Source: Octopus bimaculoides
Taxonomy: Eukaryota
Direction of reading: 5' to 3'
Assembly: GCF_001194135.2 (NCBI RefSeq)
Contig: NC_068987.1
Span: forward strand, 50,270,102-50,334,101
DNA: 64,000 nucleotides
A program made the translations under genes and the position numbers. The stretch's first letter is position 1, and the number at the start of each line of letters is the position of its first letter. The notes beneath the pieces are model-generated. The model ran no database searches, was not told the DNA's origin, and was given only the letters and a program-made list of their open reading frames with translations. Below are positions 24,425-50,092 of this stretch, one piece after another.

Positions 24425-24983
24425 GTAAAAATATCTCAGAATATCAGATATGGGCAATATTCATCTTCTGAAGTTGTAAACAGTTTCTTTATTTGTATTA
24501 CTGCTGATTATAACTTCTTTGTACCTCTGATGCATATATTATTATTCCACACACATAGTTGATGATAAACTCTGTTTTCTGTTGCTGTAATTTTTTTTTT
24601 TACATTTAAGCTCTTTTTATTTTGTTTTCTTTGTACACTTGATACCACTTTTTTGGTGTGCATTTTAATAGTTTACTCTGTAGAAGAATCTTTTCTACAA
24701 CCTCACATTTATATTTGTGCATGTAATATATCTTCTGTACCCCTATGGTCTGTATATATATTTATATATAAACATATGCATGTGTTTGTATGTATATATA
24801 GATACTATGTATATATTTATGTATAAACATATTATGTGTATTTATGTGTATATAAATACTATATATATGTATGTTAAATGCTCGTATCTGTGTTTGTATA
24901 TGTACATAAGTGTGTGTGTTTGTAAGTGTATATATGTGTTTAAGTATGTTATGTATGTGTGTGTATATCTATATATCTATCTT

Positions 24984-25020
<37 letters not shown>

Positions 25021-25879
25021 CTGTATATTATAATTGTATTCTGGTAGTCACTTTGACCATTTAAAACTAACATCTGTTGCTATATTTATTTATATTGGTA
25101 TTTTGTAACATAATTTTACATAATCACATCATTTCTAGTTTTATAAATTCATTATTGCTGTCTATATTGTATGTTTGAACCTCAAGCATCATAATGTATT
25201 ACCTGGATTTTCTATCTTTTATAGGCATTACTTCTTTTTTTTTATTTGTGTGTTCACTTAAAAAATTTTTTTATTATTTTTCTCCACAGCATTGCATAAA
25301 TTGTTTTATCACATATCTATTATATAATTCCCTAATTAAACAAATGGAAACAGAATAGTACTCACATATTAACATGTATGCGTACATGTGTGCATGCAGT
25401 TTTATATATCTGTTGGTAATACAATCATATTTTAGTAGTCACATAAACCAATTAAAACAACTATATGCTGCAATATTTAATTCTTATTATATTAGCATTT
25501 TGCAGCAAATATATCAGCATTTCACATCCAGCTTCCATGCTGGCATAGGTTGATGGTTAAAAGCCTATATTAGATTGGGTTCATCCAGGTTCCTAATCTA
25601 ATGCAAGTTTTTAACCACGTAACCCATGCCAGCTGGAAAGCAGTTGTTATAAGATGACAGTGATGATATATTTGCAACCAAATGCTGTTCAAAGTTGATG
25701 ATTACTCCATCATTACTCAGTTTCTCACCATAAAACATCTTTCAGGCAGCAAAAATATATTCATAGTAACAGACTGAATTATAACTTCCGAAGCATTGGT
25801 AGAAATTCTGTAATCAATTGTGTCACTCGTAGGAATGGGGGTATTGCTACTATTAGTTTAGTTATAGAAGGTTCTAAGT

Positions 25880-26460
25880 TTGAGTCATGATCACATCACA
25901 CTCCTCTGGAACTTCACCAGAAAGATAGATGCAAATAGGCCAGACATCATACTGAAAGGCTTCAGACAAAAATCATGCCTCCTCATTGATATGACTGTCC
26001 CAATCGATATAAACGTATCTGTCAAGACCTACCAAAAACTGAGCAAATATAAAGATCTTGAAATAGAAATTAGCAAAATGTGGAATCTGAAGACGAAAAC
26101 AATACCTATTGTCATAGGTGCCTTGGGAATGACAGCAAAACGGACTGATTACTACCTAGCTCAGATACCAGGAAACCCCAAAATGGCCGAAGTTCAAAAG
26201 ATAGTACTCATGGGAACTGCCCATATCCTACGTAAAATACTGTCTATGTGATCTCAAATTTTAAAACAAACACATAATTTTCTTATGGTTTCTTAAACAT
26301 TCACTAGAACAAAACTGTACAAATCCAAATATATGGTACCCTAGGCATAACACCTACATGAACTTCTAACTTGTTGTCTCTTGAGGTCTCTGGGTGAGAC
26401 TTGGATCCAACTTGTACAAATGCAAAGCAAAAGTCAAGCATAAAATAATAATAATATTTA
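25880..26460 (+). mobile_element. 5'-truncated non-LTR retrotransposon, restriction-like endonuclease (RLE) C-terminus plus 3' UTR; R4/Dong-like
   Basis: ORF 25880-26251 has ANRPDI...LIDMTVP.D.N...K..KYKDL..EI..MW......PIVIGALG, a PD-(D/E)xK RLE pattern; ends in a (TAA)n run. Confidence 0.82.
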
Positions 26461-26464
26461 TAAT

Positions 26465-26915
26465 AACTAGAGTATAACAAACCAGACCTAGTGGTTATGG
26501 GCAAGGTGTACCACATGGTATATAATTGATATTGTGTGCCCCTTTGACCCACGATTAATCAAGAAGGAAGGTGGAAGAATAGACATATACAATCCTCTTA
26601 AGTACAAAATAGCCCAGTTATGGAAAATGAAGAATGTGAAGATAGTGCAATTATTGTTGGATCCTTGGAGACAGTATCAGAAGGCATCGAGGAATATAAA
26701 GGAAATCTGAATAGAGTGCCCAGTAGAACTGTTACAAAAGGCTTACCTCCTTGGCACCAGAATAATAAAGGAAGTATTAGCTTGTTGAAAAGAACAGATA
26801 ACATGGTACTGTAAGTTGCAGGTAGCAAGCCTAGTACACATGCAAGACTCCAGGATTTCCAACAAAACCTGAGTTAAAAAGAATAATAATGATAATAATA
26901 ACAATAATAGTAATA
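26465..26915 (+). mobile_element. Second, frameshifted RLE-type LINE 3' fragment of a different family
   Basis: Across frameshifts: YNKPDLVVMGK / IIDIVCPFDPRLIKKE..IDIYNPLKYKIAQLWKMKNV / IIVGSLETVSEGIEEY / VELLQKAYLLGTRIIKEVL*; followed by a (TAA)n-like run. Confidence 0.75.
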
Positions 26916-28148
26916 TATTTGATAATGGCCAGTGATAACCCAGTTGAAATGTAGTATAGATATAAATATTAAAATCTGTGTCTTTTTATTTTTAAAAATT
27001 TTTTTTATTAAAGATGAAGTTAATGAGCTTACACGTCTGAAACCGCCACTTACCTACAAATTATTTGACCAGTTGTTTTTCTTTCTTTTTCCATTTCGTT
27101 TTTTCATTTTTTTTTTCTAATTCATTTCTGATTTTTAGGAAACAACATCATCAGCAGTAACAACAAATGCAACAATAATGTTATGAAATTTATTTTCTAA
27201 TTGATTTTTTAAATTTTTGTTTCAGATGCTACTTGTGTGTGTACATATATATATGTATGTGTTGTTTGCTTGTCTTTGTTGTAATTAATAATTTATGCTC
27301 ATTGGCAGAATTGGTAGTGTCGAGCAAAATATTTGGTGGTATTTTGTAGTAACTCTTAAGTCCTGAGTTCAAATCTCACCAGGGTTGAATTTTACCTCTC
27401 ATCCTTCCATGGTTAATAACATAAATACCTGTCTAGTAAGTACTGGGGTCAATGTAATTGACTATAGCCAACTCCTGAATTTAAGTCTTGTGTGCCTATG
27501 TTTCAAATTAATAATTATGTTATGCTGGTGTCACTTTAGTTTGTTGTCTGTTTGTGTTTTAAATGTGAATGTGAATTAAATGTGAATGTAATTAACATGC
27601 AATATTTGGTTGTAAATGACAATGTATTGTTGTTTGTGATTATCTTCTATTTACATGTTAGCTTGATAAAAAGGAGTGGAGGAACACAGCTCCTCATCTC
27701 CTTCTCCGACTAATTCAACTTTTTTAGTACTTAACTAGAATGTGAGTTAAACATATGGATAAGAAATGTGATTGAAACAACTTCATTCAAGAGCTATTCT
27801 CTGCTATTCCATTTTTGTGTGAGAGCAGGATTCAGCCCTTAAACTCCAAACTATTGACTTGTTCATTAGTTATTTCTCTGTTTTCACTGACCAGCTAGAC
27901 TGATTGACAGATAAGCAATTGGTTGAGAGAAGTCCAACTTATCTAAAGCACACCCTGACCCAATCTTATTGGAAGTAACAAGATGTCTATTGTAATTCTT
28001 GTCAGTGATACAAATACAAACGTCTGTGATAGCTATCTATTTTGAAGAACAGTTGAGAGAATGGCTAAAATATTGAACTATTGCTCTTTAATCCCTACAG
28101 CCAACACTGTTTTTGTCTCCTTGGAGAAAACAAACAAACTCACCTTAC

Positions 28149-28167
28149 TTTAGCATACACCAGCTGA

Positions 28168-28237
<70 letters not shown>
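28149..28237. repeat. (AT)n microsatellite, representative of many (AT)n/(AC)n/(ATT)n/(ACT)n tracts, most N-gaps being flanked by them
   Basis: Directly visible. Confidence 0.95.
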
Positions 28238-28240
<3 letters not shown>

Positions 28241-29305
28241 TGTGTGTTAGCTGGTGGCTTTAAGATTTTGACAGCATGATTGTTTATTTTTAGAATAACA
28301 TTCTAGGGTAAATGTGTGTGATAGGCCAGATCTGGCCATTTTTGAAGATGAAATGAGTAGAATATTTGAGCTGGATATGGCCAGTTTAAATGCTAAAGGG
28401 TTAATGTCAGCAGATTATTTAACTAATGCTAGTTTCTAGTAATATTTTCAAACATAAGCATACTGAGCAGTTATCCTGGAGCCCCATAAGTCTAGAGGGC
28501 CCAGTGTTAATCTATGTTTATTGGTGGTTGTGTAAGGACCTTCAGTGTATTATTTTGCATGGAGGATATATAATGTTAAGACAGCCCTGCTGGTTTCCAT
28601 GATCATTATAAAAGCATATATTTGCAACACCCTGTCTTATCCATAATTACATAGAAAAATTTCGTAAAAAGAGACAACAATAAATGCCATCATAAAATTA
28701 TGTCTGCCTTGTCTCCTGCTCATTGGCTCATAAATTATCAACTGCACTTTTTATCAAACCTTGAGAGATTAAAAGTTTAAGTTGAGACTGCATGATTTGA
28801 CCTCCAGGATAGTATTGGATATATTCATTCCTTAAAAGGATTTTCAATTTTTCCATTATGTATGTTCCAGTTCCATATTAACATGTTATATTTTACATGA
28901 AGTGAGCTGACAACTTTAGTCCACATGAAGAGAGCTGTATTTACCATCATAAACTTTATAAAGGTTCACCATCAGTTTGATGATGTAGAAATTTAATCAG
29001 TTTAAGCTTTGATAAGATACTGAAACATTTTTACACTTCCAAAGAGTTGATCCTTGAAATGCTACTGTATGAGGGAGAGAGAGAAAAAAAAGAAGAAACT
29101 GAACTAGCAGGGTTGAACAAATTAAATTGAATGTCTGTCATTGTAAATAACAAAGAACTTTCCTGTCTGTCTTGTTGTCTGTTTTAGTTGGTTGCTGTCT
29201 CTTTTAGTTCTCCTTTCATTTTGATCCTCCCACATTTTTTTCTTCCACCTTGCTTATTGTTATTGGTACTGCTCTAATACAACCTAACGTTTCTGTTCCC
29301 TTCAG

Positions 29306-29506
29306 CTAAGGGTGGCAGCCCTAAAGCTCCCCTGTCTCCACGCAGGGTTAGAGTGCCTGTTCAGATGGCACCTCCAACAACAACGCTCACCTTTCACAAT
29401 AGTGCTTATGACCCACTTACACCACTTATCAACCAGCTGTCGAGTTGTGTCCCCACACCTCCAAGTGGTCGTTCCAGAGATGACTGTACATACATATATA
29501 ATAGAG
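29306..29506 (+). CDS. VCL: Candidate alternative hinge exon, 201 nt (AKGGSPKAPLSPRRVRVPVQMAPPTTTLTFHNSAYDPLTPLINQLSSCVPTPPSGRSRDDCTYIYNR)
   Basis: cctaac branch-like motif, tttctgttcccttcag acceptor, open phase-1 frame, GAG|gtagta donor; an alternative in-phase donor follows 29485 (180 nt). GC-richer island in an AT-rich intron. No transcript evidence. Confidence 0.7.
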
Positions 29507-29653
29507 GTAGTAAACTAGTCAAGTGTTGTTTGCATGAAGTTTCAGCTCAGTCACCAAATGTCTTTTTCTCTCCCTTCTTTCAGTTGCACTCACTCCTCAA
29601 GTTCACTTGTCCACTAGGTTAATTCAAATTAGCAATTGTATTATCATTTTTAT

Positions 29654-29701
<48 letters not shown>

Positions 29702-31542
29702 ACATTAGGTATATTCTTAATTACTTTTTATGTACATTATATCATATTATCATAGTTGTATCACAGAGGAAATTTTTCCATGCCTAAATGCAAATGTTTT
29801 TTTTATACCTTGTTTAACAACAACATTTCAGATGAAAGAATCCCTAATCTTCATCACATATTAAGTAGTAAGACATGCTGAGGATATCAGGGCAAGAGAA
29901 TTTGGAAATAGCTTGAAAATTTATCTACTTTCGAGTATGATGAGTCTCACAACTTATTGGATCGTGGTCACCTTTGACCAGTTTGTCTTCATACAGCATA
30001 TCTTAGGAAGCCCATAAATTATAGCTAATATAACTCACTAATACAAGCTACTAAATCACAGAATGATCTGGTTGAGTAAGCTTTGGGATACCATGAAAAG
30101 ACCAGCGAGAGCCATTTTCAAACAAAAGCCAAAGAGAATGGGGTGTAGGAAGTGAAACAAATCTTTCAAGATTGAGTTGAGGACTGGTGAAGGAGTTGGG
30201 AAATATGAGCATGATTGGGCCTGGGAGCAAACTCATAACAGGACTTGCAGCAGTGCTGGGTGGAGATCTTGTCATCCAGTCCAGTACTACATGGAGAGCA
30301 GGAGGGATTAAAAATAGAAAAAGCTACTAATTTTAGAGTCTTCAAGCTATAAACTATACTTATTTTTAGTAGATTGCTGGACTTGATGAAACTTGAATGT
30401 GTGATATTGTATCCAAGGAAGAAATCATTGCATATATTTATTTATTTTATGTGACTATGGACAAGTGAGCCAATAGTTTCCTAACTTCAGCTAAGTTTTG
30501 TTTCCCCATGATGAATTTAAAAAAAAAATTTTGTACTTAAAATTTTTTTTGAATGCATGTCGCATGGTGTTGAAAATGAGAAATTCCATAATTTTTCCTT
30601 TTATCATATTATTTCAGAAGTATGTTTAATTAATAACTCATTCTGTTTATGTAAAACGTTTATCTCTCATGATATTTCAATTGAGCAAGCCTTTTACAAT
30701 AATTATTAATGCTTAATACATGATAAAATAATAATAGTAGAATATAAACATATATACAAATTCATGTACATGGACCTTATAGGGAAAGGTGCAAAGGCTA
30801 AATGTACTGAAGTGTACTTTCAGTATTTCTGGCAATATTTGTTCATTTTCAAGTATGATGAATCTCACAATCTATTGGGTTGTAGAGTCACCTCCGATTT
30901 TAATCTCCATGCAGCATATCTTATGATACACATAAATTACAGCCAATGTCAACACAAGCTTCCATATCATGGAATGAGCCAGTTGAGTAACCTACAGGAT
31001 ACCATCACTGTGGAATGGCAGAAGATGCTCATCCATGTGGTACACATGTCCATGAACAGATCAGTGGTAGGCTGTTTCAAATGGAAGCAAGGCAGGGAGT
31101 GCAGGAGGTGAAACAGATCTCCCAAGATAAGGTTGAGGACTGTGGAAGAAGACCTTATTAATATGGGTGGTACCTAGCCTGGGAGCAGGTTCATAACAAG
31201 TAGAGTTTGCAACCATGCTGATAACTCTTCTCATCCAGCTCGTAATGATTAGTAGATTGTTAATCAATTTCTCTGTTTCTTTTCATGCCAATAAATAATT
31301 ACCTGTAGTCCTTTATGTGGCTGAAGACAATCATGTACAGAGGACTTATAATAATTTGTAAATGAAACCAAAATCTTTTTGGGTACTCAAGCAATATTTT
31401 CAAAACCTAATTATGGGTAACAGTAAAAGAAAAGAAAAAAAAAATTTAATGTCCTTGTTGCATTTATATATTCTTAATTATGACACAAGAATTTCAAGGG
31501 TAGCAGGTTGCCTGTAAACTATAAGTTAGGTCTCTTGTCTCA

Positions 31543-31583
<41 letters not shown>

Positions 31584-34500
31584 NNNNNNNNNNNNNNNNN
31601 NNNNNNNNNNNNNNNNNNNNNNNNNNNNNNNNNNNNNNNNNNNNNNNNNNNNNNNNNNNNNNNNNNNNNNNNNNNNNNNNNNNNNNNNNNNNNNNNNNNN
31701 NNNNNNNNNNNNNNNNNNNNNNNNNNNNNNNNNNNNNNNNNNNNNNNNNNNNNNNNNNNNNNNNNNNNNNNNNNNNNNNNNNNNNNNNNNNNNNNNNNNN
31801 NNNNNNNNNNNNNNNNNNNNNNNNNNNNNNNNNNNNNNNNNNNNNNNNNNNNNNNNNNNNNNNNATATATATATATATATATATATACATACATATGCAC
31901 ACATATACAAACATGCACACAGATATGTATATTATAAATATTATACATTATATCTATATGCATGTGTGTGCATGTGTGTTGCTTCACATTTATCTAATGC
32001 ATATGTTTAAAGTACATATACACAACGACTAGAAGGCTATGATAATTTATTTAAGAAATAACATTTAATGATTTAAATAACTCCTGGCTATCCCATCAAA
32101 AATTTATAAGGAGACAATGATATTTTATGCATATAAATGTATACAAAAGAAAAAAAGAGAATGAAAAGGAAGATATTCCTTCTTTCTCGCTGTACAGAAT
32201 TAAAAATATTACTATTTTATGTTAATTTATTGTAATTTAAAACAAACTGGTCCAGCAGTATTTTAAGTTAGAGCAATTTCATTCTTTTTCCTTTCTTATA
32301 TCCTGAACTATGCATTAGATAAAATTGAAAATATGCTGTTCTTGCAAATGGTATTAACATTTAAGCATATTTCAAAGTATTTTTAATACCATTTGCATCA
32401 ATAATATAATGATTACTGCAGAATGGTTTGCATTCTTCATGTATTCATGTTTTCAATGTTTAAAATAACTTTCCTTGTGTGACTGGGTTTCAAACCCTCC
32501 CTACCTTTTTCATTGAAAATTCATTTAATATTGATATTTCTCTTGTTTATTTCAAACAGTGTTTCTTCCTATCTATCTATCTATCTATCAATAGATAGAT
32601 ACACACACACAACATAAATAAATGATAAATCCATACCCATATGTTTATAGATACATACACACACACATATATCATCATCACTTAATCTATGTTCTATGTT
32701 GGCATGGGTCAGGTGTTTTGACAGGATCTGACAAGGAGCCAGACTACATCGAGCTGCAGTATTAGCTTTGGCATGGTTTCTATTGCTGGATGCTCTTCCT
32801 AATGCCAAGCCCTTTACAGTGTGTAGTGGGTGTTTTTTGTGACACTGACGCTAGTGGAGTTGCTAAGTAACTTGCAAGACAAACAGAAAACACTTTCCTG
32901 CAATTGAGTAGGAATCAACACCTGGCTTTGTGCCAGGTGTTGACAGGCTGAAGTATGATGCAGACACACATACACAAAACCATTAAAGGAGTGTCATCAG
33001 ATCTTTACAACAGTTGTGAGTCCAAGAAGCAATATATGGTATATTTATTCAGTGTGGAAATATACTATTTGAATCTGTTAGGCCTAAGGATGGAGAATTT
33101 GATTAAAATATTTTCTCAAGATATCTTCTTCTGTGAGAGGGTTCATAAATACATGCACACAGGCCCACACATATAATCATGTATAATTATTTACAATTAT
33201 TTCTCATCTGATAATCATTTGAAACACTTCCTCTTCATTAAGGCATTTTATCATAAACATCTTGGGAAACAGAGTGGGAGGTGGCATCAGGAAGGGCATC
33301 TAGCCATAGAAAACTGTAATTAATCTTGTCGGATTTCTGCAAGCATGGAAAGGTAAACATCAAAGTGATGATGATGATGGTAATGATGATGCATTATGGA
33401 AGAGAGCGCAAAGGTCTTGAAGGGTCATTGTAAAATGTTCACTCACAAACTTTATTTTGGTTGTACCTTGTAGAAAGCACTGGTGCTGATGCCATGTAAA
33501 AATCACCCAGTACACTCTGTGGAGTGTTTGGTGTTAGGAAGAGCATCCAGTCATAGAAACCAAGTCAAAGCAAACTATGGAACTTGGTGTGGCCCCAGCC
33601 CTTGACAATTCCTGTCAAGCAGCCCAACCCATGCCAGCGTGGGAAATGGATGTTAAATGTTGATGATGATGATGGTATATATAGAAACCATGAACTAGGC
33701 ATGTGCTAGTGAGAGATTTTTATAAATGCAGTTATTTTAATAACTGCATCATACAATAATAATCAACCTGACAATAATCATATAGTACAACTAAGATTTT
33801 AAGCAAATAATTAATAATTATTTTACTATCATACATGGTTGATAATTTATGATATTGCTTCAAAGGTTAAAATTTTATATAAATTCTGTGATTTCTGTGG
33901 TTAAGATGCTAACCACCTCACAATACATTTTGACTGAAACTAATTTCCTCATGGCTGGAGGGAATTCATATGGATTATTCCGAATGGTTCCCTCTACAGC
34001 ATAAATCTGCTGAAGCAAGCTGATCAGATCTGCTTAACAAGAACAAACAACTGCAACTGCAAAAGAATAAATGCCCTCTCACTGTATTTGAACTGTTACT
34101 CTGTACATCCTAAACCTTCTCGTGTAGTACTCATAAATTATTAAATAACATACCAATCATGATATAGAAGATCTTCATTTGCGGTTTTTTAAAGTATTTT
34201 TTCAACTATTATTAACTTCTATTTCGGTATGTGAATATTTTGTATGTTTTCAGGAACACTGGTACTTTTATTCTGCACTTGCTTCATACTCACAAATGAG
34301 TTCTTTCTTTCTTTCTTTTTTGATCCTGTTTCCTTCCCTCTTATTTTGTATTCAATTCATTACTTTCAACTTACTAATTGTACTTAATTATTATTTATTT
34401 CATAATCATTTATGTTTTTTTGTAACTATTTTCCAAATTATTTTTATAACTTAATAATGATAATATTAAAAGTAAAGAACAAACTGCACGATATGAATTA

Positions 34501-35835: not shown

Positions 35836-35860
35836 ATTATTTACATTATACGTACATACA

Positions 35861-35891
<31 letters not shown>

Positions 35892-37561
35892 GGGTGCAGG
35901 CATGGCTGTATAATTCAGAAGTTCACTTTCTAACTGTATTGTCTCAGGTTCAGTCCCACTGTGTGGTACCTTGGGCAAGTGTATTCTATTATAGCCCTGA
36001 GCTGACTAAAACTTTCTGGACAGATTTTGGTTGAAAGAAACTGAAAGAAGACTATCATTCATCATCATCATCATCATCATCATATATATATATATATATA
36101 TATGTATATGTATACACACACACACACACACATGCATACATACATACATACATGTTCATATTTTACACATGCAAACACTTGTTTGAAAGTGTGGCAGTAA
36201 GTGGTGTTGACCATTTACCCTGTCAATAATTTGTCTGGGCACTTTGCAACTTTCAAACCATGTGGAATAAGTGATCCTTTACTTGAAAAACAGGTAAGGA
36301 TTAGTGTCAGGTAGAGCATCTGGCTGCAGTATAATGCTTCAGATAACAAGCATGGAAAAATGAATGTAAAACAAACTTGTTGAGGCTACAATACAAGTGT
36401 CTAGGACTGGTTGCTATTGGAAACTTTTGTATTTTAATGACTTCGCTCTTGTAGTAGAATCTGTCACAGAGTTTTAGAAATGTCTCCAACTCTGGAAGCA
36501 TGGCTTACTGTCCAAAAACATTAAAAAAAAGTCAATATGACAAATATTTAAGTGCTCTTGAGTGAGAAGGTCCTGTACACAAAGTTGTTTTACTCAGTCC
36601 ATATGAAGAAAAGTTGCAATGAAATGTTTGGCCAGTTGACTGTAACATAATTTCATATATGATAGACATACAAGGAGTTGTTAGCAGTAAATACAGATAT
36701 GAGACGAAGTCCATGATCAAACTCAGCTGACATGCTAGATGTGGTTGAGAGTTTCTGTTGCACATGTGATATAATTTTTGCTACATGTAAGTATTGCAAA
36801 TGATTATTAGAGTAAGGAAAGAAGGTAGGATTGTTGTTGAGAGAGATATTACTTGTAGCATTCAAAGATTAGAAAGGATAGGTAACAAATGACAGAGACA
36901 TATTGGTAATATGCTCTGCAGCAGAAGTGTTCAAACTATGCCAACATTAAAAACAGAAGATAAGTAAAATAACAATCAGGAGTAACTTGATGAAATGTTA
37001 ATATTAATGTAATTCTAAACTTTGGATGCTTCTGTATTTCATTACTGTTACACTCGAGTTCATATAAATGTATATATCCAGGCATATGTATAGAGATACA
37101 CATAGCTAAGCAAACTAACATATATTTAGATACACACACAAGCATACATACATATACATTGTTGAGCTCTTTCCCCTTTCCTATTCCCTTTGTATGTGTG
37201 TGTATGTATTTTTGTGNNNNNNNNNNNNNNNNNNNNNNNNNNNNNNNNNNNNNNNNNNNNNNNNNNNNNNNNNNNNNNNNNNNNNNNNNNNNNNNNNNNN
37301 NNNNNNNNNNNNNNNNNNNNNNNNNNNNNNNNNNNNNNNNNNNNNNNNNNNNNNNNNNNNNNNNNNNNNNNNNNNNNNNNNNNNNNNNNNNNNNNNNNNN
37401 NNNNNNNNNNNNNNNNNNNNNNNNNNNNNNNNNNNNNNNNNNNNNNNNNNNNNNNNNNNNNNNNNNNNNNNNNNNNNNNNNNNNNNNNNNNNNNNNNNNN
37501 NNNNNNNNNNNNNNNNNNNNNNNNNNNNNNNNNNNNNNNNNNNNNNNNNNNNNNNNNNNNN

Positions 37562-38139: not shown

Positions 38140-38184
38140 TCCCTGATCAACATGCTATGGATGGAAGAAGTGAGGTCCTAGAAG
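38140..38184 (+). CDS. VCL: Candidate alternative hinge exon, 45 nt (VPDQHAMDGRSEVLE)
   Basis: tactttttacag acceptor, GAAG|gtattt donor, symmetric phase 1, no stop codon. Confidence 0.68.
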
Positions 38185-38268
38185 GTATTTTAGTAAAAAA
38201 ACTAATCTATGTTTTACTTGCACTAATCTATGTACATGATGAGGTACACACACACACACACACACACG

Positions 38269-38321
<53 letters not shown>

Positions 38322-39710: not shown

Positions 39711-39833
39711 CTACCGTACAGAGGGAACAACATTACGCTCCAGAGCAGAAGAGTCCCATGTTTGTTCCTCCTCCCCCAGTGCCGCCACCACCACCACCAC
39801 AGGATAGCTACAATTATGGATATGATTACAGAG
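39711..39833 (+). CDS. VCL: Candidate alternative hinge exon, 123 nt, polyproline (ATVQREQHYAPEQKSPMFVPPPPVPPPPPPQDSYNYGYDYR)
   Basis: ctgac branch-like motif, cattcatttgcag acceptor, AGAG|gttctt donor (weak), symmetric phase 1; proline-rich composition fits the hinge. Confidence 0.72.
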
Positions 39834-41316: not shown

Positions 41317-41382
<66 letters not shown>

Positions 41383-42064
41383 NNNNNNNNNNNNNNNNNN
41401 NNNNNNNNNNNNNNNNNNNNNNNNNNNNNNNNNNNNNNNNNNNNNNNNNNNNNNNNNNNNNNNNNNNNNNNNNNNNNNNNNNNNNNNNNNNNNNNNNNNN
41501 NNNNNNNNNNNNNNNNNNNNNNNNNNNNNNNNNNNNNNNNNNNNNNNNNNNNNNNNNNNNNNNNNNNNNNNNNNNNNNNNNNNNNNNNNNNNNNNNNNNN
41601 NNNNNNNNNNNNNNNNNNNNNNNNNNNNNNNNNNNNNNNNNNNNNNNNNNNNNNNNNNNNNNNNNNNNNNNNNNNNNNNNNNNNNNNNNNNNNNNNNNNN
41701 NNNNNNNNNNNNNNNNNNNNNNNNNNNNNNNNNNNNNNNNNNNNNNNNNNNNNNNNNNNNNNNNNNNNNNNNNNNNNNNNNNNNNNNNNNNNNNNNNNNN
41801 NNNNNNNNNNNNNNNNNNNNNNNNNNNNNNNNNNNNNNNNNNNNNNNNNNNNNNNNNNNNNNNNNNNNNNNNNNNNNNNNNNNNNNNNNNNNNNNNNNNN
41901 NNNNNNNNNNNNNNNNNNNNNNNNNNNNNNNNNNNNNNNNNNNNNNNNNTATGATGTAACTCTTTACCCTCATACATATTGAGATGTGTATTGAAAAGTT
42001 ATATCAATAACAATATTCTTAATTATAAATAGTAGTTGAATTTGGTATGTCTCACATATTACAC

Positions 42065-42107: not shown

Positions 42108-42784
42108 ACATAGAATATAGATGCATTTTGTTTTTCATAGGTTTTTCTTTTTTTACTTTTTGCATACTTAGCTATTGTATGAGTGTATTAGTTATATTTT
42201 GTACATTTTAGTTCTGAAAATTCATAGTAGAAAGTATATGTATTGATGTACTTACGTATTAAATGTTGTATTTATTACTAGTACCCTTCTTGTAAATAGT
42301 ATATTTTATTTATTATAAGTTTATGTAGATTTATTAGCATTTATAAAGATTTATTATTTGTATTTTAACATTGATTGTAGAAGTTAAATGGTGTTATGTA
42401 ACTATTATTAGTTCAACCCCTTTCTCATATGCAACTGTCCTTGAATCAGTAAATCAGGTCCATTGTTAATGAATGCATTTAAAAGAGAGTGTTCATAGAT
42501 TCTTCACAAATTGCAAATATTTGAGTTGAACGAATGTTTTTGATTAATAGATCATAGGTGTGTATCTTGTCTTTGGCACAATTCTGTATCCTTAGCAAAG
42601 AAATTTAGCTCCATCAATGCCTCCATCCACCTGGCTACAGCTATTTATGCAGCTTGCAGTAGTGAGCTTACATTCCCTTCCACTTTGGCAAAATCTATAA
42701 TAAACTGATAATCGGGATGGCACCTGTGCCCAGCGTCGCCTTTCTGACACTTGTGCCCGCAGCATGTGTAAGAACTTTCGAGCG

Positions 42785-43073
42785 AGATCATTGCCAGTGC
42801 CCCTGGACTGGCTCTTGTGCGGGTGGCACATAAAATACACTATTTTGAGCGTGGCCGTTGCCAGTATCGCCTGACTGGCCTTTGTGTAGGGGACACGTAA
42901 AAGCACCTACTACACTCTCAGAGTGGTTGGTGTTAGGAAGGGCATCCAGCTGTAGAGACTCTGCCAAATCATGTTGGAGCCTGGTGTAGCCATCTGGTTT
43001 CACCAGTCCTCAGTCAAATCGTCCAACCCATACTAGCATGGAAAGCGGACATTAAACGATGATGATGATGATG
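42785..43073 (+). mobile_element. (GAT)n-tailed retroposon copy
   Basis: Closely similar to 10690-11068. Confidence 0.78.
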
Positions 43074-43549
43074 AATGTTCCACCTCTAGGAGAGAGTGTT
43101 ACATCCCACTGATGCCTAATAACACTGAAACTAATATAATCTCTCTCATCCTTATACATTTTTGTAATATATTTGATTCAAGTATACAGACAAATATCAC
43201 TAAATCTGACTATTGCTGATTGCATAACCAAGCCCTAGTATTGTTCTCAGCAAGATCTATTTGAGGGAGTTACAAGAAGTGATCTATGGTCTAAGGTTCA
43301 ATCCCTTACTCCAACATTGTCAGGTTAAACATGTAGCATCATTTATTTAACATTTAATTCCTAAAACAGTCTTCTCTTGTGGAAAGCTTCTTTAGGCATT
43401 TCTGCTTTGTTTTTAGCTTCAACTGGAAAAATCTTTATTTCTGCTGGAAGATACTGGAGATTTGAAATTAGGTAGAGCTGGTGGGAAAGATGGTCATGAC
43501 TTCATACAGTGATAATAGTACCTTAGTTTTTATGAATAATTTAAGAATA

Positions 43550-44160
43550 TCTCTCTCTCTCTCTCTCTCTCTCTCCTTCTCTCTCTCCTTCTCTCTCCAC
43601 TTCCTTTCTATTCTGTTCACATTTTTTGTTCTTTTTTTTCTCCCCCTCTCTCTATATATGTTCCAATATTTCTTTCTCTCTCCTTACACACATTACTTTC
43701 TGGTCTCCTCTTTCTATCTCCTGCTTTGTTTTTTTTTGTTTTTACATCTTTCTTTCTATCCTCTTTCATTCCTGTCTCTCACATTTTTCATTTCTCTGTC
43801 CATTTTTGCCTTTGTCATCTATTTCTCCTCCCCATCGTCCTATCCTCCTCCTCCTCCTCCTGTATCATCCCCCTCTTCCTCACATTCTCCTCTTCCTCAC
43901 ATTCTCCTCTTCCTCCCATTCTCCTCATCTTCCTCCCATTATCCTCTTCCTCCCATTCTCCTCTTCCTCTCATCCTCCTCTTCTCCTCTTCCTCTCATCC
44001 TCCCCTTCTCCTCTTCCTCCTATCCTCCTCTTCCTCCCACCACTTCCCCTTCTCCTCTTCCTCCTATCCTCCTCCTCCTCACTTTCATACACCAACCTCT
44101 TCAATTATATTACCAAGTTATTCATATTTTGACCTCCTCTCCCTTTCTCTTTCCCTTACT
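43550..44160. repeat. Polypyrimidine low-complexity tract ((CT)n and degenerate CCT/TCC repeats)
   Basis: Almost pure C/T on the + strand; similar tracts at about 57450-57960 and 62210-62320. Confidence 0.9.
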
Positions 44161-45509
44161 ACTGGAAACTTCTCATAATTTTCTACAACTGCAATGAACT
44201 GCATGGAGACTAGTTCTTTGTAACTGGAAAGAAACAGATGCTAAAATTCTGGAAGCTCTTCCTTCAAAATCTCATTATCAGAGGTTATCATGCTCACACA
44301 CAGTGCTTCTAATGGATTATTCTTTTGATTCAGTCTTTTTCTTACCATGTTTATTTTGTGCATTGTGCCATCATCCTCTTTCTCAACAACCATTGTTTTT
44401 TTGATTAACCCTGTTACTGTGAAAAGCAGATTTGTCCACTCAAAATTTCATTACTCTTATATATACCAATCTATCTTTATGTGAGGAATGTCATATTTGA
44501 AGCTATTTTTTTATTGAGGGCAACCTGGCTTGCAGAAGATACCGATTATACTTTTTAGTACATATTTAACATTGTTACTGGAAATACCATGAAATTTAAT
44601 TTTGCAATTAATATAGTTGTTATTAGCCAAGAAATGAAGTGTACAATATAATATCATCAAAGCATTAAAGCTGTTGTTTCATGTCTACTTTTGAAAGAAA
44701 GCTGTTGTGATTCATTTAGTGTGGGTTTTGCTGTGACTGATATTACCACAGTTATGACCACTGTACTACTTATCTCCACATTAATGTATAGTCTGTATTG
44801 AAAATTTTGATTTTAAGACCCCTTCTTCATCTCCAAATCAACATTCAGTTATAGAAATATTTAGATATTTACTTTATTTGAAAATTTTCATTGGTATACA
44901 ATATTCTCCTTTAAGCATTATAATCCTGGTTATTTTCAGAGTTGTTCTGATCTCAAATCGACTTTTTATTCTGCTTATTACATTAGATTCTCTACAAAAT
45001 AATTAATTGGTCTTTTAGATCATATAAAGATGATTTCACATTAATTAAACTTATGATAAAATGTTGTACTTGTGGATCTAATGTAATGATCAATAAACTC
45101 AAACTTAAAGTTCAAACATGATTATTGATGAATAGACTAAAATAATTGAGATATTCTTGTGTTTTGGAAACATAGCAGATAAGTGTCCCTTTCATTTATA
45201 ACAATGATCTAGGATTCAACCTTGACTTAAAAAATTATGTATATGGAAAACAGAGTACCTGACACCACAGATAGTAACTCCATTAGAAATGTTCTAAATA
45301 GCCCATTGTGATAATTGTAGTAGCAGGTTACTATAATTATTTCAATGATAAAAAATATAGTGACTGGTTATGAGCAGTGACTTAGTGGTTTAATTTAAGG
45401 TGAAATAATGTTACTTCTGATTGGTGATTTCTTTCCAAAAAACAAAACAAATTCACATTGTTCAAAGAGTAAAATAAACACAATTCCAGAAAAATTTAAT
45501 ATTAATTAG

Positions 45510-45905: not shown

Positions 45906-47447
45906 TATGAATATTATAAAGTTCTGGATAAGCTTCCAATGTTTGTTAAATCTGTAACATACCTTAGATTCTCATTTGAGTCATTTTCACTTAACTCTTT
46001 GTGTGATTATTTCTGGTCATTGGTCAACAATATCCTAAAAAGAAATAATGCCCTTGACGCATTTTTTTTCACTTTTTTTGTATCATATTGTACATCTAAT
46101 TGTATTTTCTTTAATACTTTGAGGTGGGATAGATGGTGGGAATAAGAGATCTGAAACCAAGATATCTCATGTATCCATTCTCATCATTCTTACTGAAAGA
46201 GTTGTTTTCTACTGAAAAAAGAGTGGTTTTTATTGATTGTATTCTTTCTTTTAACAGATAATATGAAAGTTATTAAGACTTTTTTTTACTTTTTTGAGTG
46301 TGTGTAATGCTGAAAACTGGGTTTCTGCATGAAGATTAACAAATCTAATTATTATTATCCCAATACTTGTTTCTCATTTCGTCCATTCTTCCAATTTTAT
46401 AAACTTTTCAATTAATTTCCTTGCTAAATATACTGTTTGTTTTCAATGCTTTTTTTTTATTACGAAATGTTTCATTCCAATGGCTTATTTGATTTTGAAT
46501 AATTTTCTTGTTAAATGCAGTGTTTGATTTTAAATGTCTTTTATTAAAATTAATTTGAATTTTTTATTTTAAAAGTTTTCATTAAAAATTGATTGCTGTT
46601 TTTAATTACATCTCTCAATTTTGTTTCTTTCACTGAATGAAAGGAAACAAGTTGTTAAATTGTCTTGCTTTATCAATTTATTCACAGTACTTCACTTACA
46701 TATACAATTATTGTGTTATGATTTAGCTATTTTACACTTTAGAAGTTACATACTTTCATTCTCTCCATTTATTGTGATCTCTACCCACCCACATTCCAAG
46801 TTCTTCTGTCTCCATTCGCGTATATTCTCCACGTATGTTGAGAGCCCACACAGACATCTTAACACTATTTTTATATCATTGTAGTTCCATCCTGATTGCT
46901 CACTCTCCCCTCTTCTAAAAAGTGAGTTGACATATAGCTCCTCTACTGCAAGAAACTTGCTCTGCTCTGGTTCCTTCTCTCCTACTTAAATCCTTCTCCC
47001 CCCTTTGCATGAATCTACCTCCCTTGAGGTTCATAGTCTTGCAAGCTATGTGGTGACCTCACTAGTACTGGTGCAATGAAAATAGCACCTGGTACATGCT
47101 GTAAAGTGGATGATGTTGGGAAGGGTATCCAGATATAGAAACCTGAGCAAAGCAGGCATTGGAGTATGATGCAGTCCTTAGACCTGTCAGATCCTGTCAA
47201 ATCATCCAACCCACACCAGCATGGAACATGGACATTAAATGATGACGATATTTACCAGATGTTAATGTTGTAGTGGAACCTATTTTTAAGTTTTCCATCT
47301 GAAGATACAAAACTGCCACAAGTCTTTTGTAGGAAACAAAATGCCAATTATTGATATCGTATTGAACTAACCACTCATCAACCATGAAATCTGCCAAAGG
47401 TGTTTTGTAATGTGCTTAGACTGTATGTCTACTTTTACACACCTTAA

Positions 47448-47669
47448 CCTTTTTGTTAACATATTTCTGTCGAAATACACTGCTTTTGTTTAAATTAATT
47501 ATGAAAATATTGAAGAATATAGTTAAGCAACTTTGTCATTACTAAGCTGGTGTTTGGAACATGAACTGACATAAAATTTTGATGGGCAGTATTAACTTAG
47601 ATCACTTTAAAACTGGAAATTTGTACCATAGAACCAGAGGCAGTCTCAAGCAGGTTAGTATCAAAAGAG
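47448..47669. mobile_element. TTAA-flanked MITE, second family
   Basis: TTAA at 47444-47447 and 47670-47673, imperfect CCTTTTTG...CAAAAGAG termini. Related copies at about 3221-3428 (reverse) and 14385-14611. Confidence 0.65.
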
Positions 47670-50092
47670 TTAATTCATCAAAGTTGTAAGATTGCGTAGG
47701 GCTGTTATTTGCAATTGACTTGTCTCCTACCTAAGGTGGAGTGGTGGGATCCACCCTGTCATAATTGACACCATGAAACAAGAATTAAGTAAAAGTCCCT
47801 TCTGGCTACTGGAAGTATAAAGTTACATAGATTGCATATCATGGATTTTGCTTACAGCAGGATTATAACTTAACACCTCAAGCTGATAAATCTCTTCTAC
47901 ATAATATTTATTTACTTTGGTGCACTGAACCATTGGAAATTTTTGTGTGTGTGGGCAGAGAGCATAGATAGAGAGTAACTCTCTCCTCCATATCATTGAG
48001 TTTAGTGCAACTTGCCTCTAGCACATGTAAATCTAAACATCCTGTTTTAGGGATACAAGATCAATCATAATATTTTTTACTTTACAAAACCAACTCCTCC
48101 TCATTCTCCTCTTAGCTTAACATCTAGGCAGTGTAGGTAAAACTATAATTGTTGACAAAAACTGCTTCTTTACAAGGAAGGTTATTTTTGTGTTTGTTTA
48201 TTAATTCATTCATGTTATTTATTAATGTTTTATTCTTGTTGTGTTTGTTTTTTCTTTTAATTTTTAATTCATCTAAACTTTTTCTGGTTTCATTTGAAGC
48301 ATGATGGTGCGCTTTTGTTCATGGTTTCCATCTTTTTGGAACAACTGCCATTTCATTTATATGATTTTTTTCTTTTTTTTAATATATATGTATATATGTG
48401 TGTGTGTGAAGTATTATTACTGTTAAAAACAGTAATAATGAGGTGGTTAGAAAAACTTCTACCTAAACAGGTATAAAATATTTAAAGAAAAGAAGGGTAA
48501 GGATATCTTTAATTTTTTAGCAAGCGGTATCTTTACCCTTCTTTTCTTTATATATATATATATATATATTTCATGTTACTCATCACTGCTTTGGTTTTCT
48601 TATTTGTTCTTGTTTTACTAAATTGTTCTTTGATTTTTGCAATGGCAGTTACATGGTAATAATAATAAGGTTAAAAGAAATGAAGGATCTGTTCTTTAGT
48701 TTTTTTTATTTATATATACAAGTACAGAAAGCCTTTTAATGTCTATGTTATTACATTTTTAAAACTTTTCATTTAGCGCTTGTGAATGTTTGTGCTTCTA
48801 CCGTAGAGGTACAAGCATTCTCAAGAGCTAGATGAAAAATTCTTAAAATATAATAACAAATATTTGAATACTTTCTGCATCTGTATATAAATAAACCAAA
48901 GAACAGTTCCTTCATTTTTGATGAGCCTTATCATTATGACCAATATGTTATTCTGTACACTATCAAAAGTGTTTATATGCACACACACACATACATAAGC
49001 ACAAACGCATAAATACAATTTTTTGTTTCTATTTTAGCAATATTTAGCTTCATCTTGCCTCTTGTTCATGTTCTTGCTTCTTGTTCATTTAATTTTATTA
49101 TTTTTTCCTTCTGCTTCCCTCTTTGTCTTACCTTGAAGAACTTAGATCTGAAATCTCTAAAGTACTTAACTTAGTAAGTCTGTACTTTTGTATTTTACTA
49201 TGAGACTGCATTTCTGTCAATGCCTGGCAGAAATATAAGTTTTTAGGGCTTTACTCAAACCAGAGATATATTAAGTAGTTGAAAGAAGCTGGCAGTTTTT
49301 CTCTTTATCGTTGACAGGTTTGCATCACATTGTAATGAAAGAGTTTATCTTAGTTCTGTGAATTACTGCTTAGTTCCAGCACGGTGTGTGTATCAAACAT
49401 TTATACAATCATTGACCATTTAATATTGGATTACTACCATACTCTCTACATTCCCAATCCTCACTGTCCTAACTGTAAATCATGCTGTATTGCTTTTTGT
49501 TTTTCATCTCTACAAGGGTAGTAAAATATATCTCTAATGTACTGGGGTCAATTCAGCTAATAATTTCTTTCAAATTAAGCAAGTGGCCCAAGAAAGAAAC
49601 CAATTTTGAACTAATGTAAAGTGTAATCTAGGGGAAAGGAAGTAATGGAAAAAAACAAAACAAAACAATAAGAGAAATAATTAGGAATTTCTCTTAAGAT
49701 GCACAAATCAACAGGGATGTTTGCATATAACTCCAGACTTAGTTATCAATTGTATCCATTTAGGTTCTATCAGGTTTCCAATAGGTTCCATATATTTCCA
49801 AAATGAGATTTTCTTATTGGTTCAGGTTTATGAACTCTACCATTCTATAGCAATAAACCTTCTATTGTGACCCTTCTCTGCACTTTACATCTTTACCATC
49901 ATTTATTGCTTTGATTTGAAGTTTCCCTATTAAATTTTCTAAACTGCTGTTCCATCTATGCCAGCTGTGCATGTCTACTGCAGCTTTCTGCATACAATAT
50001 TTCTCTTGTTATTGCTTAAATGATGTTAGTGCATATGCAAAGAATTACATAATAGCCTAGAAAGTACAACAGTGCCAAAATATTGCTTTCAG

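What the first reader, a model, noticed from the sequence alone, without database searches (positions are those of the whole stretch)
24425..50092. Combinatorial cassette-exon array in the vinculin proline-rich hinge
Seen: the ~25.7 kb intron between ...PDMSQLSIS G| and |AT GCT CCT (DAPPRPP) is phase 1 and is by far the longest in the window. It contains three stop-free phase-1/phase-1 exon candidates (201, 45 and 123 nt), each ending in G, so any subset splices in frame: up to 8 hinge isoforms and up to 123 added residues. Known: vertebrate vinculin has one major cassette, the 68-aa metavinculin insert, placed inside the tail around WSSK. Here WSSK-DNEII is uninterrupted within exon 52150-52265, so that mechanism is not available. 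Inference: this lineage may tune vinculin by remodelling the hinge (ligand sites and head-tail spacing) rather than the tail.
Basis: partly seen in the sequence, partly recalled or inferred. Interest (0 to 1): 0.8.

Follow-up and report, generated by a model that had tools for sequence, protein, structure and literature searches.

The report
Octopus vinculin hinge cassette exons
The long intron in the Octopus bimaculoides vinculin gene holds three real, alternatively spliced exons that lengthen the protein's flexible hinge, but they are already in public RefSeq isoform models and the same arrangement is found across molluscs.

Summary
The phase-1 intron 24425-50092 contains three AG/GT-bounded, phase-1/phase-1, stop-free exons. 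They are C1 (29306-29506, 201 nt), C2 (38140-38184, 45 nt) and C3 (39711-39833, 123 nt), and each ends in G. None touches an assembly gap.

Open frames and splice consensus alone do not rise above chance. Homology does. The window is O. bimaculoides VCL (CM046607.1). RefSeq isoforms X1-X3 carry C1+C2+C3, X4 carries C2+C3 and X5 carries none. O. sinensis adds C1+C2 and C2 alone. De novo transcripts show the direct 24424-to-50093 junction in another Octopus, and C2+C3 in decapodiforms.

C2 and C3 are conserved across gastropods, bivalves and a chiton. There, RefSeq models include them in many different subsets. C1 differs at 1 of 67 residues between Octopus species. AlphaFold2 predicts the whole hinge, cassettes included, to be disordered.

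Two parts of the interpretation fail. The tail is also alternatively spliced: a 45-nt cassette lies at 54989-55033 and another lies downstream of the window. The array is also not lineage-specific; Priapulus and arthropods have cassettes at the same position.

Verdict: real, already annotated, functionally unstudied, and moderately interesting as comparative biology.

The parts
24310..24424 (+). Constitutive vinculin exon encoding ...AFPPPPDMSQLSIS, ending in phase 1 (G|). It carries the FPPPP motif.
   Evidence: It matches all Octopus vinculin isoforms and the L004 cDNA. Donor CAG|gtaaaa scores 6.8.
24425..50092 (+). Phase-1 hinge intron, 25,668 nt as assembled. It holds the cassette array.
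   Evidence: The direct 24424-to-50093 junction is present in the de novo transcript L004 (SRR3401912).
29306..29506 (+). Cassette C1, 201 nt, 67 aa: AKGGSPKAPLSPRRVRVPVQMAPPTTTLTFHNSAYDPLTPLINQLSSCVPTPPSGRSRDDCTYIYNR.
   Evidence: Present in O. bimaculoides RefSeq X1-X3, O. sinensis X1-X7 and O. vulgaris X3. It differs at 1 of 67 residues between species. Acceptor score 11.2, donor score 3.7, GC 0.50.
31584..31864 (.). Assembly gap, intronic, between C1 and C2.
   Evidence: The same gap is in GCA_001194135.2.
37217..37561 (.). Assembly gap, intronic, 579 nt upstream of C2.
38140..38184 (+). Cassette C2, 45 nt, 15 aa: VPDQHAMDGRSEVLE. It is present in every inclusion isoform seen in Octopus.
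   Evidence: Homologues beginning VPDQ/VPDS/VPE occur in decapodiforms, bivalves, gastropods and a chiton. Against the decapodiform cDNA, 11 of 15 residues are identical, 4 of them through synonymous codons.
39711..39833 (+). Cassette C3, 123 nt, 41 aa: ATVQREQHYAPEQKSPMFVPPPPVPPPPPPQDSYNYGYDYR. It has two polyproline tracts and a tyrosine-rich end.
   Evidence: tblastn hits from decapodiform (E 4e-17), gastropod (5e-10) and bivalve hinge inserts. Against the decapodiform cDNA, 30 of 41 residues are identical, 7 of them through synonymous codons. The donor GAG|gttctt is weak, score 0.3.
41383..41949 (.). Assembly gap, intronic, between C3 and exon 50093.
50093..50211 (+). Constitutive exon encoding (D)APPRPPLPSDACPPRPPPPETDDEDESAFPVPQVNQPIM, the conserved core of the proline-rich hinge.
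52150..52265 (+). Constitutive tail exon encoding [38 protein letters not shown]. It has no intron at the metavinculin insertion point.
54989..55033 (+). Tail cassette t1, 45 nt, phase 2/2. It turns LSHLV-R-GEGG into LSHLV-SCQENCKWIWCTVHKT-GEGG. It lies outside the finding's span but contradicts 'hinge rather than tail'.
   Evidence: Bounded by ttgcag|T...GAC|gtaagc. Present in O. bimaculoides X1, X4 and X5. The decapodiform transcript P0143 has SCESTCKWIWCTAHKI at the same place.

Best explanation
The window is part of the Octopus bimaculoides vinculin gene. Its long phase-1 hinge intron carries an ordered array of three alternatively spliced cassette exons, C1, C2 and C3. Because all three are phase 1/1 and end in G, any inclusion pattern stays in frame. 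The junction residue depends only on the downstream exon: A for C1, V for C2, A for C3 and D for the constitutive exon.

Shown: the exons exist, are used in different subsets, and are conserved. Inferred: they are modules of an intrinsically disordered linker. Inclusion lengthens the head-to-tail tether from about 50 to about 170 disordered residues. It also adds short binding or regulatory motifs.
- C3 adds two polyproline tracts and a tyrosine-rich end.
- C1 adds four Ser/Thr-Pro sites, including SPRR, and a PxxPxR motif.
- C2 is acidic.

This would change which partners dock on the hinge. It could also change how readily the tail re-binds the head. Weak 5' splice sites on the cassettes make inclusion depend on regulators.
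For: - **Identity.** The window exons are 100% identical to O. bimaculoides vinculin models. The window equals CM046607.1 from about position 50,270,102.
- **Alternative use.** O. bimaculoides X1-X3 carry all three cassettes, X4 carries C2+C3 and X5 carries none. The 2015 UniProt models A0A0L8FYB6 and A0A0L8FX90 carry C2+C3 and none. O. sinensis X7 carries C1+C2, X9 carries C2 only, and X10 and X11 carry none.
- **Transcript evidence.** Logan contig L004 (3.2 kb, 959 aa) joins 24424 directly to 50093. P0141 has C2+C3. P0143 has a different first cassette plus C2+C3 and was assembled from two separate runs. One Acanthosepion (Sepia) pharaonis model has C2 only.
- **Conservation.** C2-like and C3-like cassettes are included in many subsets in Haliotis, Pomacea, Babylonia, Mercenaria, Ostrea, Argopecten, Magallana, Liolophura and others. 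C1 shows 1 change in 67 residues between Octopus species. A transcript of another Octopus species shows synonymous-only changes in 88 of 652 constitutive codons and amino-acid changes in 10.
- **Splicing signals.** Cassette donor scores are 3.7, 3.7 and 0.3. Thirteen constitutive donors average 7.5. Cassette acceptors are as good as constitutive ones.
- **Disorder.** In the AlphaFold2 model of the all-inclusion O. sinensis isoform, built with 50 aligned sequences, pLDDT is below 50 and no secondary structure is assigned from residue 731 to 901. Head and tail are confidently helical.
- **No domain.** The cassettes match no Pfam domain and no PDB sequence.
- **Motifs.** Listed.
Against: - No RNA-seq reads from O. 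bimaculoides were examined here. The RefSeq isoforms are computational models, so which cassettes occur together on single molecules, and in which tissues, is not established.
- C2 occurs in every Octopus inclusion model, so use may be hierarchical rather than freely combinatorial.
- The motif assignments are regular-expression matches in a proline-rich sequence. None has been tested.
- C1 has no clear homologue outside Octopus. Its alignment to the first cassette of other molluscs is weak.
- Low pLDDT is a prediction of disorder, not a measurement.
Confidence: 0.85

Rival explanations
1. The cassettes are effectively constitutive exons, or always come as a block. The shorter forms would be annotation or assembly artefacts, so there is no real alternative splicing.
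For: Most O. sinensis models (X1-X6) and three of five O. bimaculoides models include all three cassettes. Gnomon multiplies isoforms by combining variation at other sites.
Against: De novo assembled transcripts carry the direct skip junction in Octopus (L004) and in decapodiforms (P0144-P0148). The 2015 annotation, made by a separate pipeline, also gave both a C2+C3 model and a skip model. The same variation recurs in many mollusc species.
Confidence: 0.04
2. The inclusion events are splicing noise or recently exonised intronic sequence with no protein function. The open frames would be chance products of GC-rich, low-complexity DNA.
For: Open frames and usable AG/GT pairs are common in this intron. 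C1 and C3 are each open in two frames. C1 has no significant match outside Octopus.
Against: C2 and C3 are conserved in sequence, order and position across mollusc classes, with synonymous substitutions at conserved residues. C1 shows about 1.5% amino-acid divergence between Octopus species. That equals the constitutive exons, while synonymous change in those exons is roughly ten-fold higher.
Confidence: 0.04
3. Contig 37562-41382, which carries C2 and C3 and is flanked by gaps, is misplaced by scaffolding and belongs elsewhere, for example to a paralogue.
For: The contig is bounded by unresolved gaps on both sides. The chromosome-level assembly re-uses the same contigs and gaps.
Against: Proteins from a separate assembly (O. 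sinensis) and de novo transcripts place C2-C3 exactly between the ...QLSIS exon and the DAPPRPP exon, in this order and orientation. No second vinculin locus appeared among the cephalopod hits.
Confidence: 0.02
4. Use of the array is hierarchical rather than combinatorial. C2 would be an obligatory first step, and C1 and C3 would be added only to C2-containing mRNAs. That gives at most five forms, not eight.
For: All Octopus inclusion isoforms contain C2. C1 alone, C3 alone and C1+C3 are absent from 24 Octopus sequences. One Acanthosepion (Sepia) pharaonis model has C2 only.
Against: In other molluscs the C3 homologue is joined directly to the upstream exon without C2 (Haliotis P0166, Argopecten P0207, Mercenaria P0161, Babylonia P0160). 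First-cassette-only forms also exist (Ostrea P0195, Mercenaria P0172). The listing of Octopus models is also incomplete; for example O. sinensis X8 was not retrieved.
Confidence: 0.4

Closest known systems
RefSeq and UniProt isoform models of cephalopod vinculin: O. bimaculoides XP_052825595.1-XP_052825599.1, A0A0L8FYB6, A0A0L8FX90; O. sinensis X1-X11; O. vulgaris CAI97261xx
   Same: These are the same exons at the same locus. C1, C2 and C3 appear there verbatim, in five inclusion patterns.
   Different: Nothing differs at the sequence level. The database records carry no description of the array, its phase logic, its conservation or its function.
Metavinculin, the vertebrate VCL isoform with a 68-residue insert
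   Same: It is an alternatively spliced in-frame cassette in vinculin that changes the protein's behaviour without touching the head.
   Different: The metavinculin insert lies in the tail between helices H1 and H2 (residues 915/916) and supplies a replacement helix H1' (PMC2873289). The octopus gene has no intron at that point (exon 52150-52265). Its hinge cassettes lie about 80 residues upstream. They are predicted to be disordered and match no PDB sequence.
Hinge cassette arrays in other molluscan vinculins, from RefSeq models of Haliotis, Pomacea, Babylonia, Mercenaria, Ostrea, Argopecten, Magallana and Liolophura
   Same: The intron position is the same. The order is the same: a long variable first cassette, then a VPDQ-type cassette (C2), then an A[ST]L...PPPPVPPPPQD...Y cassette (C3). 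Many subsets are used.
   Different: The octopus C1 is barely alignable to the first cassette of gastropods and bivalves. Some bivalves have extra micro-cassettes (DRCYPHQ, EDKPPQDEDEVAPPA) that have no counterpart in the readable octopus intron.
Hinge cassettes in Priapulus caudatus (isoforms X8-X12) and arthropod vinculins (Penaeus, Chionoecetes, Ladona, Mischocyttarus, Strigamia)
   Same: In-frame optional segments are inserted at the same point, between ...L.[IL][SN] and (D/E)xAPPRPP. In Priapulus they occur in at least five combinations.
   Different: The cassette sequences are mostly unrelated to C1-C3. Homology of the cassettes, as opposed to homology of the intron position, is not established.

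Membership tests
Vinculin (Pfam PF01044) | A full-length match to the vinculin family profile: helical head domains, a proline-rich hinge with FPPPP and PPRPP motifs, and a five-helix tail. | tested here: met
   The window exons are identical to O. bimaculoides vinculin models. The orthologous all-inclusion isoform P0138 hits PF01044 at 958.7 bits over residues 3-1095. The AlphaFold2 model shows a helical head and tail.
Alternatively spliced cassette exon | Canonical AG acceptor and GT donor at both ends. | tested here: met
   All three have ...cag|exon|gt.
Alternatively spliced cassette exon | Length divisible by 3 and the same intron phase on both sides, so that inclusion or skipping keeps the frame. 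| tested here: met
   The lengths are 201, 45 and 123 nt, and all are phase 1/1. The junction residues in the proteins are as predicted: SIS-A, SIS-V, SIS-D, NR-V, LE-A, LE-D and YR-D.
Alternatively spliced cassette exon | mRNAs both with and without the exon exist in the same species. | tested here: met
   O. bimaculoides RefSeq X1-X3, X4 and X5 differ in cassette content, as do the two 2015 models. The skip junction is also in a de novo Octopus transcript. Caveat: these are models and assemblies. Read-level counts were not available.
Alternatively spliced cassette exon | Regulated use, for example tissue- or stage-specific inclusion. | not testable with these tools
   No RNA-seq read data or tissue labels could be reached. 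Weak cassette donors are only consistent with regulation.
Freely combinatorial cassette array (all 2^3 subsets) | Each cassette is included or skipped independently of the others. | tested here: inconclusive
   Five of eight subsets appear among Octopus models, and C2 is in every inclusion form. The missing subset types do occur in other molluscs.
Metavinculin-type tail insert | A cassette inserted between tail helices H1 and H2 (human residues 915/916, after KWSSK). | tested here: not met
   WSSKDNEII is continuous within exon 52150-52265. The insert position is given in PMC2873289.
Metavinculin-type tail insert | The insert supplies a helix (H1') that replaces H1 in the tail bundle. | tested here: not met
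   The hinge cassettes are predicted to lack secondary structure, with pLDDT below 50. They match no PDB chain at E up to 10.
Intrinsically disordered linker module | No folded domain, low-complexity Pro/Ser/Tyr-rich composition and low structural confidence. | tested here: met
   AlphaFold2 gives pLDDT below 50 over residues 731-901. There is no Pfam hit. Proline content is 16% in C1 and 29% in C3. This rests on prediction only.

The most novel reading that the evidence does not exclude
The hinge cassette array would be an old, protostome-wide splicing module of vinculin, at least as old as Mollusca. It would do for invertebrates what metavinculin does for vertebrates: give tissue-specific, for example muscle-specific, tuning of autoinhibition and partner recruitment. 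The tuning would come from changing linker length and motif content. In Octopus, C2 would act as the entry exon. No paper in the searchable library describes this.
Probability: 0.35. Interest if true: 0.55.

Novelty: already known. Interest (0 to 1): 0.3.

Why it matters
Work on vinculin isoforms is almost entirely about metavinculin, a vertebrate tail insert. These data show that molluscs, and probably other protostomes, instead vary the disordered proline-rich hinge through an ordered set of in-frame cassettes. They also vary two tail loops. The hinge binds SH3-domain proteins of the CAP/vinexin family (PMC12577685) and, from established knowledge of vertebrate vinculin, Ena/VASP and Arp2/3. 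It also carries the load between head and tail. Natural isoforms that differ about three-fold in hinge length, and differ in polyproline and phosphosite content, would therefore make a ready-made test set for linker function.

Tried and rejected
- **First protein search.** A hinge-only query returned no cephalopod protein, although identical ones are in the database. Hits appeared only when the query overlapped the N-terminal few hundred residues of the target. Absence is therefore not evidence of absence.
- **Closing the gaps.** The chromosome-level O. bimaculoides assembly is the same sequence with the same gaps. The O. sinensis gene spans 209 kb and its DNA was not returned. No cross-species intron alignment or nucleotide-level test of C1 was possible.
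- **Search for a fourth cassette.** I used tblastn against the intron with three kinds of query: the decapodiform first cassette (DTPIAAPEPKAAVIEDVLLEMEPLAPLLALHEGLTEKLPEEIVAKR), the 'QEFSEIF'-type first cassettes of bivalves, Priapulus and Penaeus, and the bivalve micro-cassettes. None gave a credible hit.
- **Other in-phase candidates with good splice scores.** These were 40711-40743, 46258-46299, 39996-40076, 35450-35578 and 30915-30986. They translate to AT-rich or hydrophobic peptides, have no homologue in any isoform, and were rejected as decoys. Candidate 42763-42822 has GC 0.55, also has no homologue, and was rejected on that ground alone.
- **Homology of C1 to the first cassette of other molluscs.** The alignment shares only a loose pattern: a proline run, F/Y..S..Y/F, and GRS...R at the end. 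I left this as tentative.
- **SH3 class I motif at the C3 junction.** The motif RDAPPRP is created there. It is not conserved in other molluscs, so I did not use it.
- **Literature.** Six searches found no paper on invertebrate vinculin hinge isoforms. The library lacks most subscription journals.

Full report
**What is in the sequence.** The exon at 24310-24424 ends ...CTCAG|gtaaaa and encodes ...AFPPPPDMSQLSIS plus the first base of a codon. The exon at 50093 begins ttcag|ATGCTCCT and encodes (D)APPRPPLPSDACPPRPPPPETDDEDE.... The intron between them is phase 1 and 25,668 nt long as assembled.

I enumerated every AG...GT segment that is stop-free in phase 1/1.
- C1, 29306-29506, 201 nt
- C2, 38140-38184, 45 nt
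- C3, 39711-39833, 123 nt

Each ends in G. Every junction codon is therefore G plus the first two bases of whichever exon follows. That codon reads A before C1, V before C2, A before C3 and D before the constitutive exon.

**Gaps first.** The gaps at 31584-31864, 37217-37561 and 41383-41949 all lie between exons.
- C1 shares a contig with exon 24310-24424.
- C2 and C3 share the 3.8-kb contig 37562-41382, which is bounded by gaps on both sides.
- No reading frame crosses a gap, so 'in frame across the gap' does not arise.

What the gaps leave open is the true intron length, the placement of the C2/C3 contig, and whether further exons are hidden. The chromosome-level assembly (GCA_001194135.2, CM046607.1:50276917-50351516, locus L003) is 100% identical to window 6816-64000. 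It has the same gaps and gives no help. Placement and order are instead confirmed by mRNA-level data from other sources. O. sinensis models, from a separate assembly, read C1-C2-C3-DAPPRPP. De novo decapodiform transcripts read C2-C3-DAPPRPP. No Octopus isoform contains a hinge segment that is missing from the window, so no known exon is hidden in the gaps.

**Is it more than chance?** Not from the sequence alone.
- The intron has 738 in-phase stop-free AG...GT segments of 30 nt or more.
- With moderate splice-site scores there are 22 in the right phase and strand, against 14-33 in control phases and strands.
- There are 31 open stretches of 201 nt or more on the + strand and 23 on the - strand.
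- The three cassettes do stand out by GC content: 0.47-0.51 against 0.327 for the intron.

The decisive evidence is homology.

**Identity and annotation.** A second protein search, with more flanking exons in the query, found 'vinculin isoform X4 [Octopus bimaculoides]' (XP_052825598.1). It is identical to the window exons and contains C2 and C3. A third search and two cluster look-ups retrieved the rest. The hinge content of each model is:

| Species | Model | Hinge content |
|---|---|---|
| O. bimaculoides | X1, X2, X3 | C1+C2+C3 |
| O. bimaculoides | X4 | C2+C3 |
| O. bimaculoides | X5 | none |
| O. bimaculoides (2015, UniProt) | A0A0L8FYB6 | C2+C3 |
| O. bimaculoides (2015, UniProt) | A0A0L8FX90 | none |
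| O. sinensis | X1-X6 | C1+C2+C3 |
| O. sinensis | X7 | C1+C2 |
| O. sinensis | X9 | C2 only |
| O. sinensis | X10, X11 | none |
| O. vulgaris | X3 | C1+C2+C3 |
| O. vulgaris | X8 | C2+C3 |
| O. vulgaris | X11 | none |

The cassettes are therefore already annotated for this locus. Five of the eight possible subsets are on record in the genus. C2 is in every inclusion form.

**Transcript-level support.**
- Logan contig L004 (SRR3401912, 3,208 nt, 959-aa ORF) is a de novo transcript of another Octopus species. It aligns exon by exon to the window and joins 24424 directly to 50093.
- Decapodiform de novo transcripts show none of the cassettes (P0144-P0148) or C2+C3 homologues (P0141).
- P0143 shows a different 46-residue first cassette followed by C2+C3, and was assembled from two separate runs.
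- One Acanthosepion (Sepia) pharaonis gene model has C2 alone.

**Conservation.** Between Octopus and the decapodiform cDNA, C2 keeps 11 of 15 residues, 4 of them through synonymous codons. C3 keeps 30 of 41, 7 of them through synonymous codons.

Hinge inserts from gastropods and bivalves hit C3 in the intron by tblastn: Babylonia at 5e-10, Pomacea at 4e-8, and oysters, scallops and clams at 1e-6 to 5e-5. Their isoforms, laid side by side, show one ordered array across Mollusca. It consists of a long variable first cassette, then a VPDQ/VPDS/VPE cassette (C2), then an A[ST]L...PPPPVPPPPQD...Y-rich cassette (C3). All kinds of subsets are used, including C3 alone, the first cassette alone, and first cassette plus C3.

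C1 differs at 1 of 67 residues between O. bimaculoides and O. sinensis or O. vulgaris. As a yardstick, I compared 652 constitutive codons between the window and L004. These show 88 synonymous-only differences and 10 amino-acid changes. C1 is thus as constrained as the constitutive exons. This is an indirect test, because no second Octopus genomic sequence could be obtained. Outside Octopus, C1 aligns only loosely to other first cassettes.

**Beyond molluscs.** Priapulus caudatus isoforms X8-X12 carry three different cassettes in five combinations at exactly this position. Arthropod vinculins (Penaeus, Chionoecetes, Ladona, Mischocyttarus, Strigamia, and the pair P0014/P0009) have optional segments there too. 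The position is shared. Homology of the cassettes themselves is not shown.

**How it probably works.** The following points bear on mechanism.
- The cassettes have acceptors as good as constitutive exons (5.6-11.2, against a mean of 6.4).
- Their donors are weaker: 3.7, 3.7 and 0.3, against a mean of 7.5 for 13 constitutive donors. This is the usual signature of regulated exons.
- In an AlphaFold2 model of the all-inclusion O. sinensis isoform, built with 50 aligned mollusc sequences, head and tail are confident helical bundles.
- In the same model, residues 731-901 have pLDDT below 50 and no secondary structure. That stretch is the whole hinge with all three cassettes.
- The cassettes hit no Pfam family and no PDB chain.
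- Motif scans give, for C3, two polyproline tracts (PPPP, PPPPPP) and five tyrosines.
- For C1 they give four Ser/Thr-Pro sites, including SPRR, and one PxxPxR. C2 is acidic.

The constitutive FPPPP and PPRPP motifs stay in the flanking exons.

My reading is that these are linker modules. They lengthen the disordered tether about three-fold and add docking or phosphorylation sites. This is inferred, not shown. The vinculin linker is known to bind multiple SH3 domains of CAP, and tension is predicted to modulate that binding (PMC12577685).

The statement about metavinculin is accurate. The insert lies between residues 915 and 916, after KWSSK (PMC2873289; residue count). The octopus exon 52150-52265 has no intron there. 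But the tail is not left alone.
- A 45-nt phase-2 cassette lies at 54989-55033 (ttgcag|T...GAC|gtaagc). It replaces R with SCQENCKWIWCTVHKT after LSHLV.
- By alignment to the human tail and the helix limits given in PMC2873289, this is the loop between helices H2 and H3.
- It is present in O. bimaculoides X1, X4 and X5, and is conserved in a decapodiform transcript (SCESTCKWIWCTAHKI).
- A further cassette, EPIPAPDGSEIAC, lies about 7.5 kb beyond the window end (L003 64731-64769), with an optional ESS. It sits in the loop after ...KATMLGAQ. It is conserved across molluscs and resembles a Priapulus segment.

So the lineage remodels both hinge and tail, and the hinge array is not peculiar to cephalopods.

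**Novelty.** The exons and their alternative use are in RefSeq and UniProt, so the finding is already known as annotation. Six literature searches found no paper that describes or studies invertebrate vinculin hinge isoforms. The library is incomplete, so this is weak negative evidence. The comparative picture of an ordered, phase-matched cassette array conserved across Mollusca, with parallels in other protostomes, is the part that may be worth a specialist's attention.

Noticed in passing
window 54989-55033: There is a 45-nt phase-2/2 cassette exon in the vinculin tail. It turns LSHLV-R-GEGG into LSHLV-SCQENCKWIWCTVHKT-GEGG, a Cys/Trp-rich 16-residue segment. The position corresponds to the loop between tail helices H2 and H3. 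It is used in O. bimaculoides X1, X4 and X5 and conserved in a decapodiform transcript.
   Followed up: partly
window 680-7515 (gaps 2215-2760 and 6274-6589): 146 nt of vinculin cDNA (L004 positions 778-923) have no match between exon 507-679 and exon 7516-7592. A constitutive exon is probably hidden in one of these gaps. Because 146 is not divisible by 3, this would explain two things. The RefSeq O. bimaculoides models start only at MANSLAEL (about 8816). The 2015 model jumps from ...IRSLDQ to SAIEGKL.
   Followed up: partly
window 63658-63720: The 2015 UniProt model A0A0L8FYB6 reads through the donor after ...ATMLGAQ into the intron. It ends [18 protein letters not shown], so its C-terminus is an annotation artefact.
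   Followed up: partly
L003 64731-64769 (about 7.5 kb beyond the window end): There is another optional tail exon, EPIPAPDGSEIAC, in the loop after ...KATMLGAQ. It is present or absent among isoforms of many molluscs and resembles EMMPLSPDGSEITGD in Priapulus. An optional ESS micro-insert sits next to it.
   Followed up: partly
window 38169/38170 (inside C2): An internal GT, GAA|gtgaggtc, scores higher (8.4) as a donor than the annotated C2 donor (3.7). Using it would give an in-frame 30-nt version of C2 (VPDQHAMDGR). No retrieved isoform uses it.
   Followed up: no
proteins P0143 (L005, L006) versus window 24425-38139: Decapodiform transcripts have a first hinge cassette, DTPIAAPEPKAAVIEDVLLEMEPLAPLLALHEGLTEKLPEEIVAKR. 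It is unrelated to octopus C1 and has no match in the readable octopus intron. This could be exon turnover between octopods and decapodiforms, or an exon hidden in a gap.
   Followed up: partly
proteins P0099, P0101, P0103, P0107, P0108, P0110, P0112, P0114, P0115, P0130 (metatranscriptome and MERC sources): In an unidentified taxon, a non-vinculin N-terminal region (...FESELDSLVDMYK...STIRETAELLCQELSDDEGTYQ...) is joined directly to the PPRPP hinge core and vinculin tail. This suggests an alternative promoter or first exons inside the hinge intron, which would produce head-less tail proteins.
   Followed up: no
first hinge cassettes of Priapulus (P0037, P0038), Penaeus (P0024), P0129, scallop (P0240), Mercenaria (P0172) and Pomacea (P0171): A shared acidic-aromatic motif of the type (Q/E)(E/D)F..IF or LDSLLNVDFNAMF, reminiscent of LD motifs, recurs in the first hinge cassette of distant protostomes. 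It is absent from octopus C1.
   Followed up: no
window 43472-44194, 29633-29701, and about 33540-33590 and 42940-42990: Several features of the intron generate decoy open frames. A 0.7-kb Ser/Pro/Leu-coding simple-sequence region is open in all three + frames. A (TAT)n run lies just downstream of C1. Two copies of a short interspersed repeat translate to ...GHPAVETLPNHVGAW and EHPVIETKSKQ.
   Followed up: no
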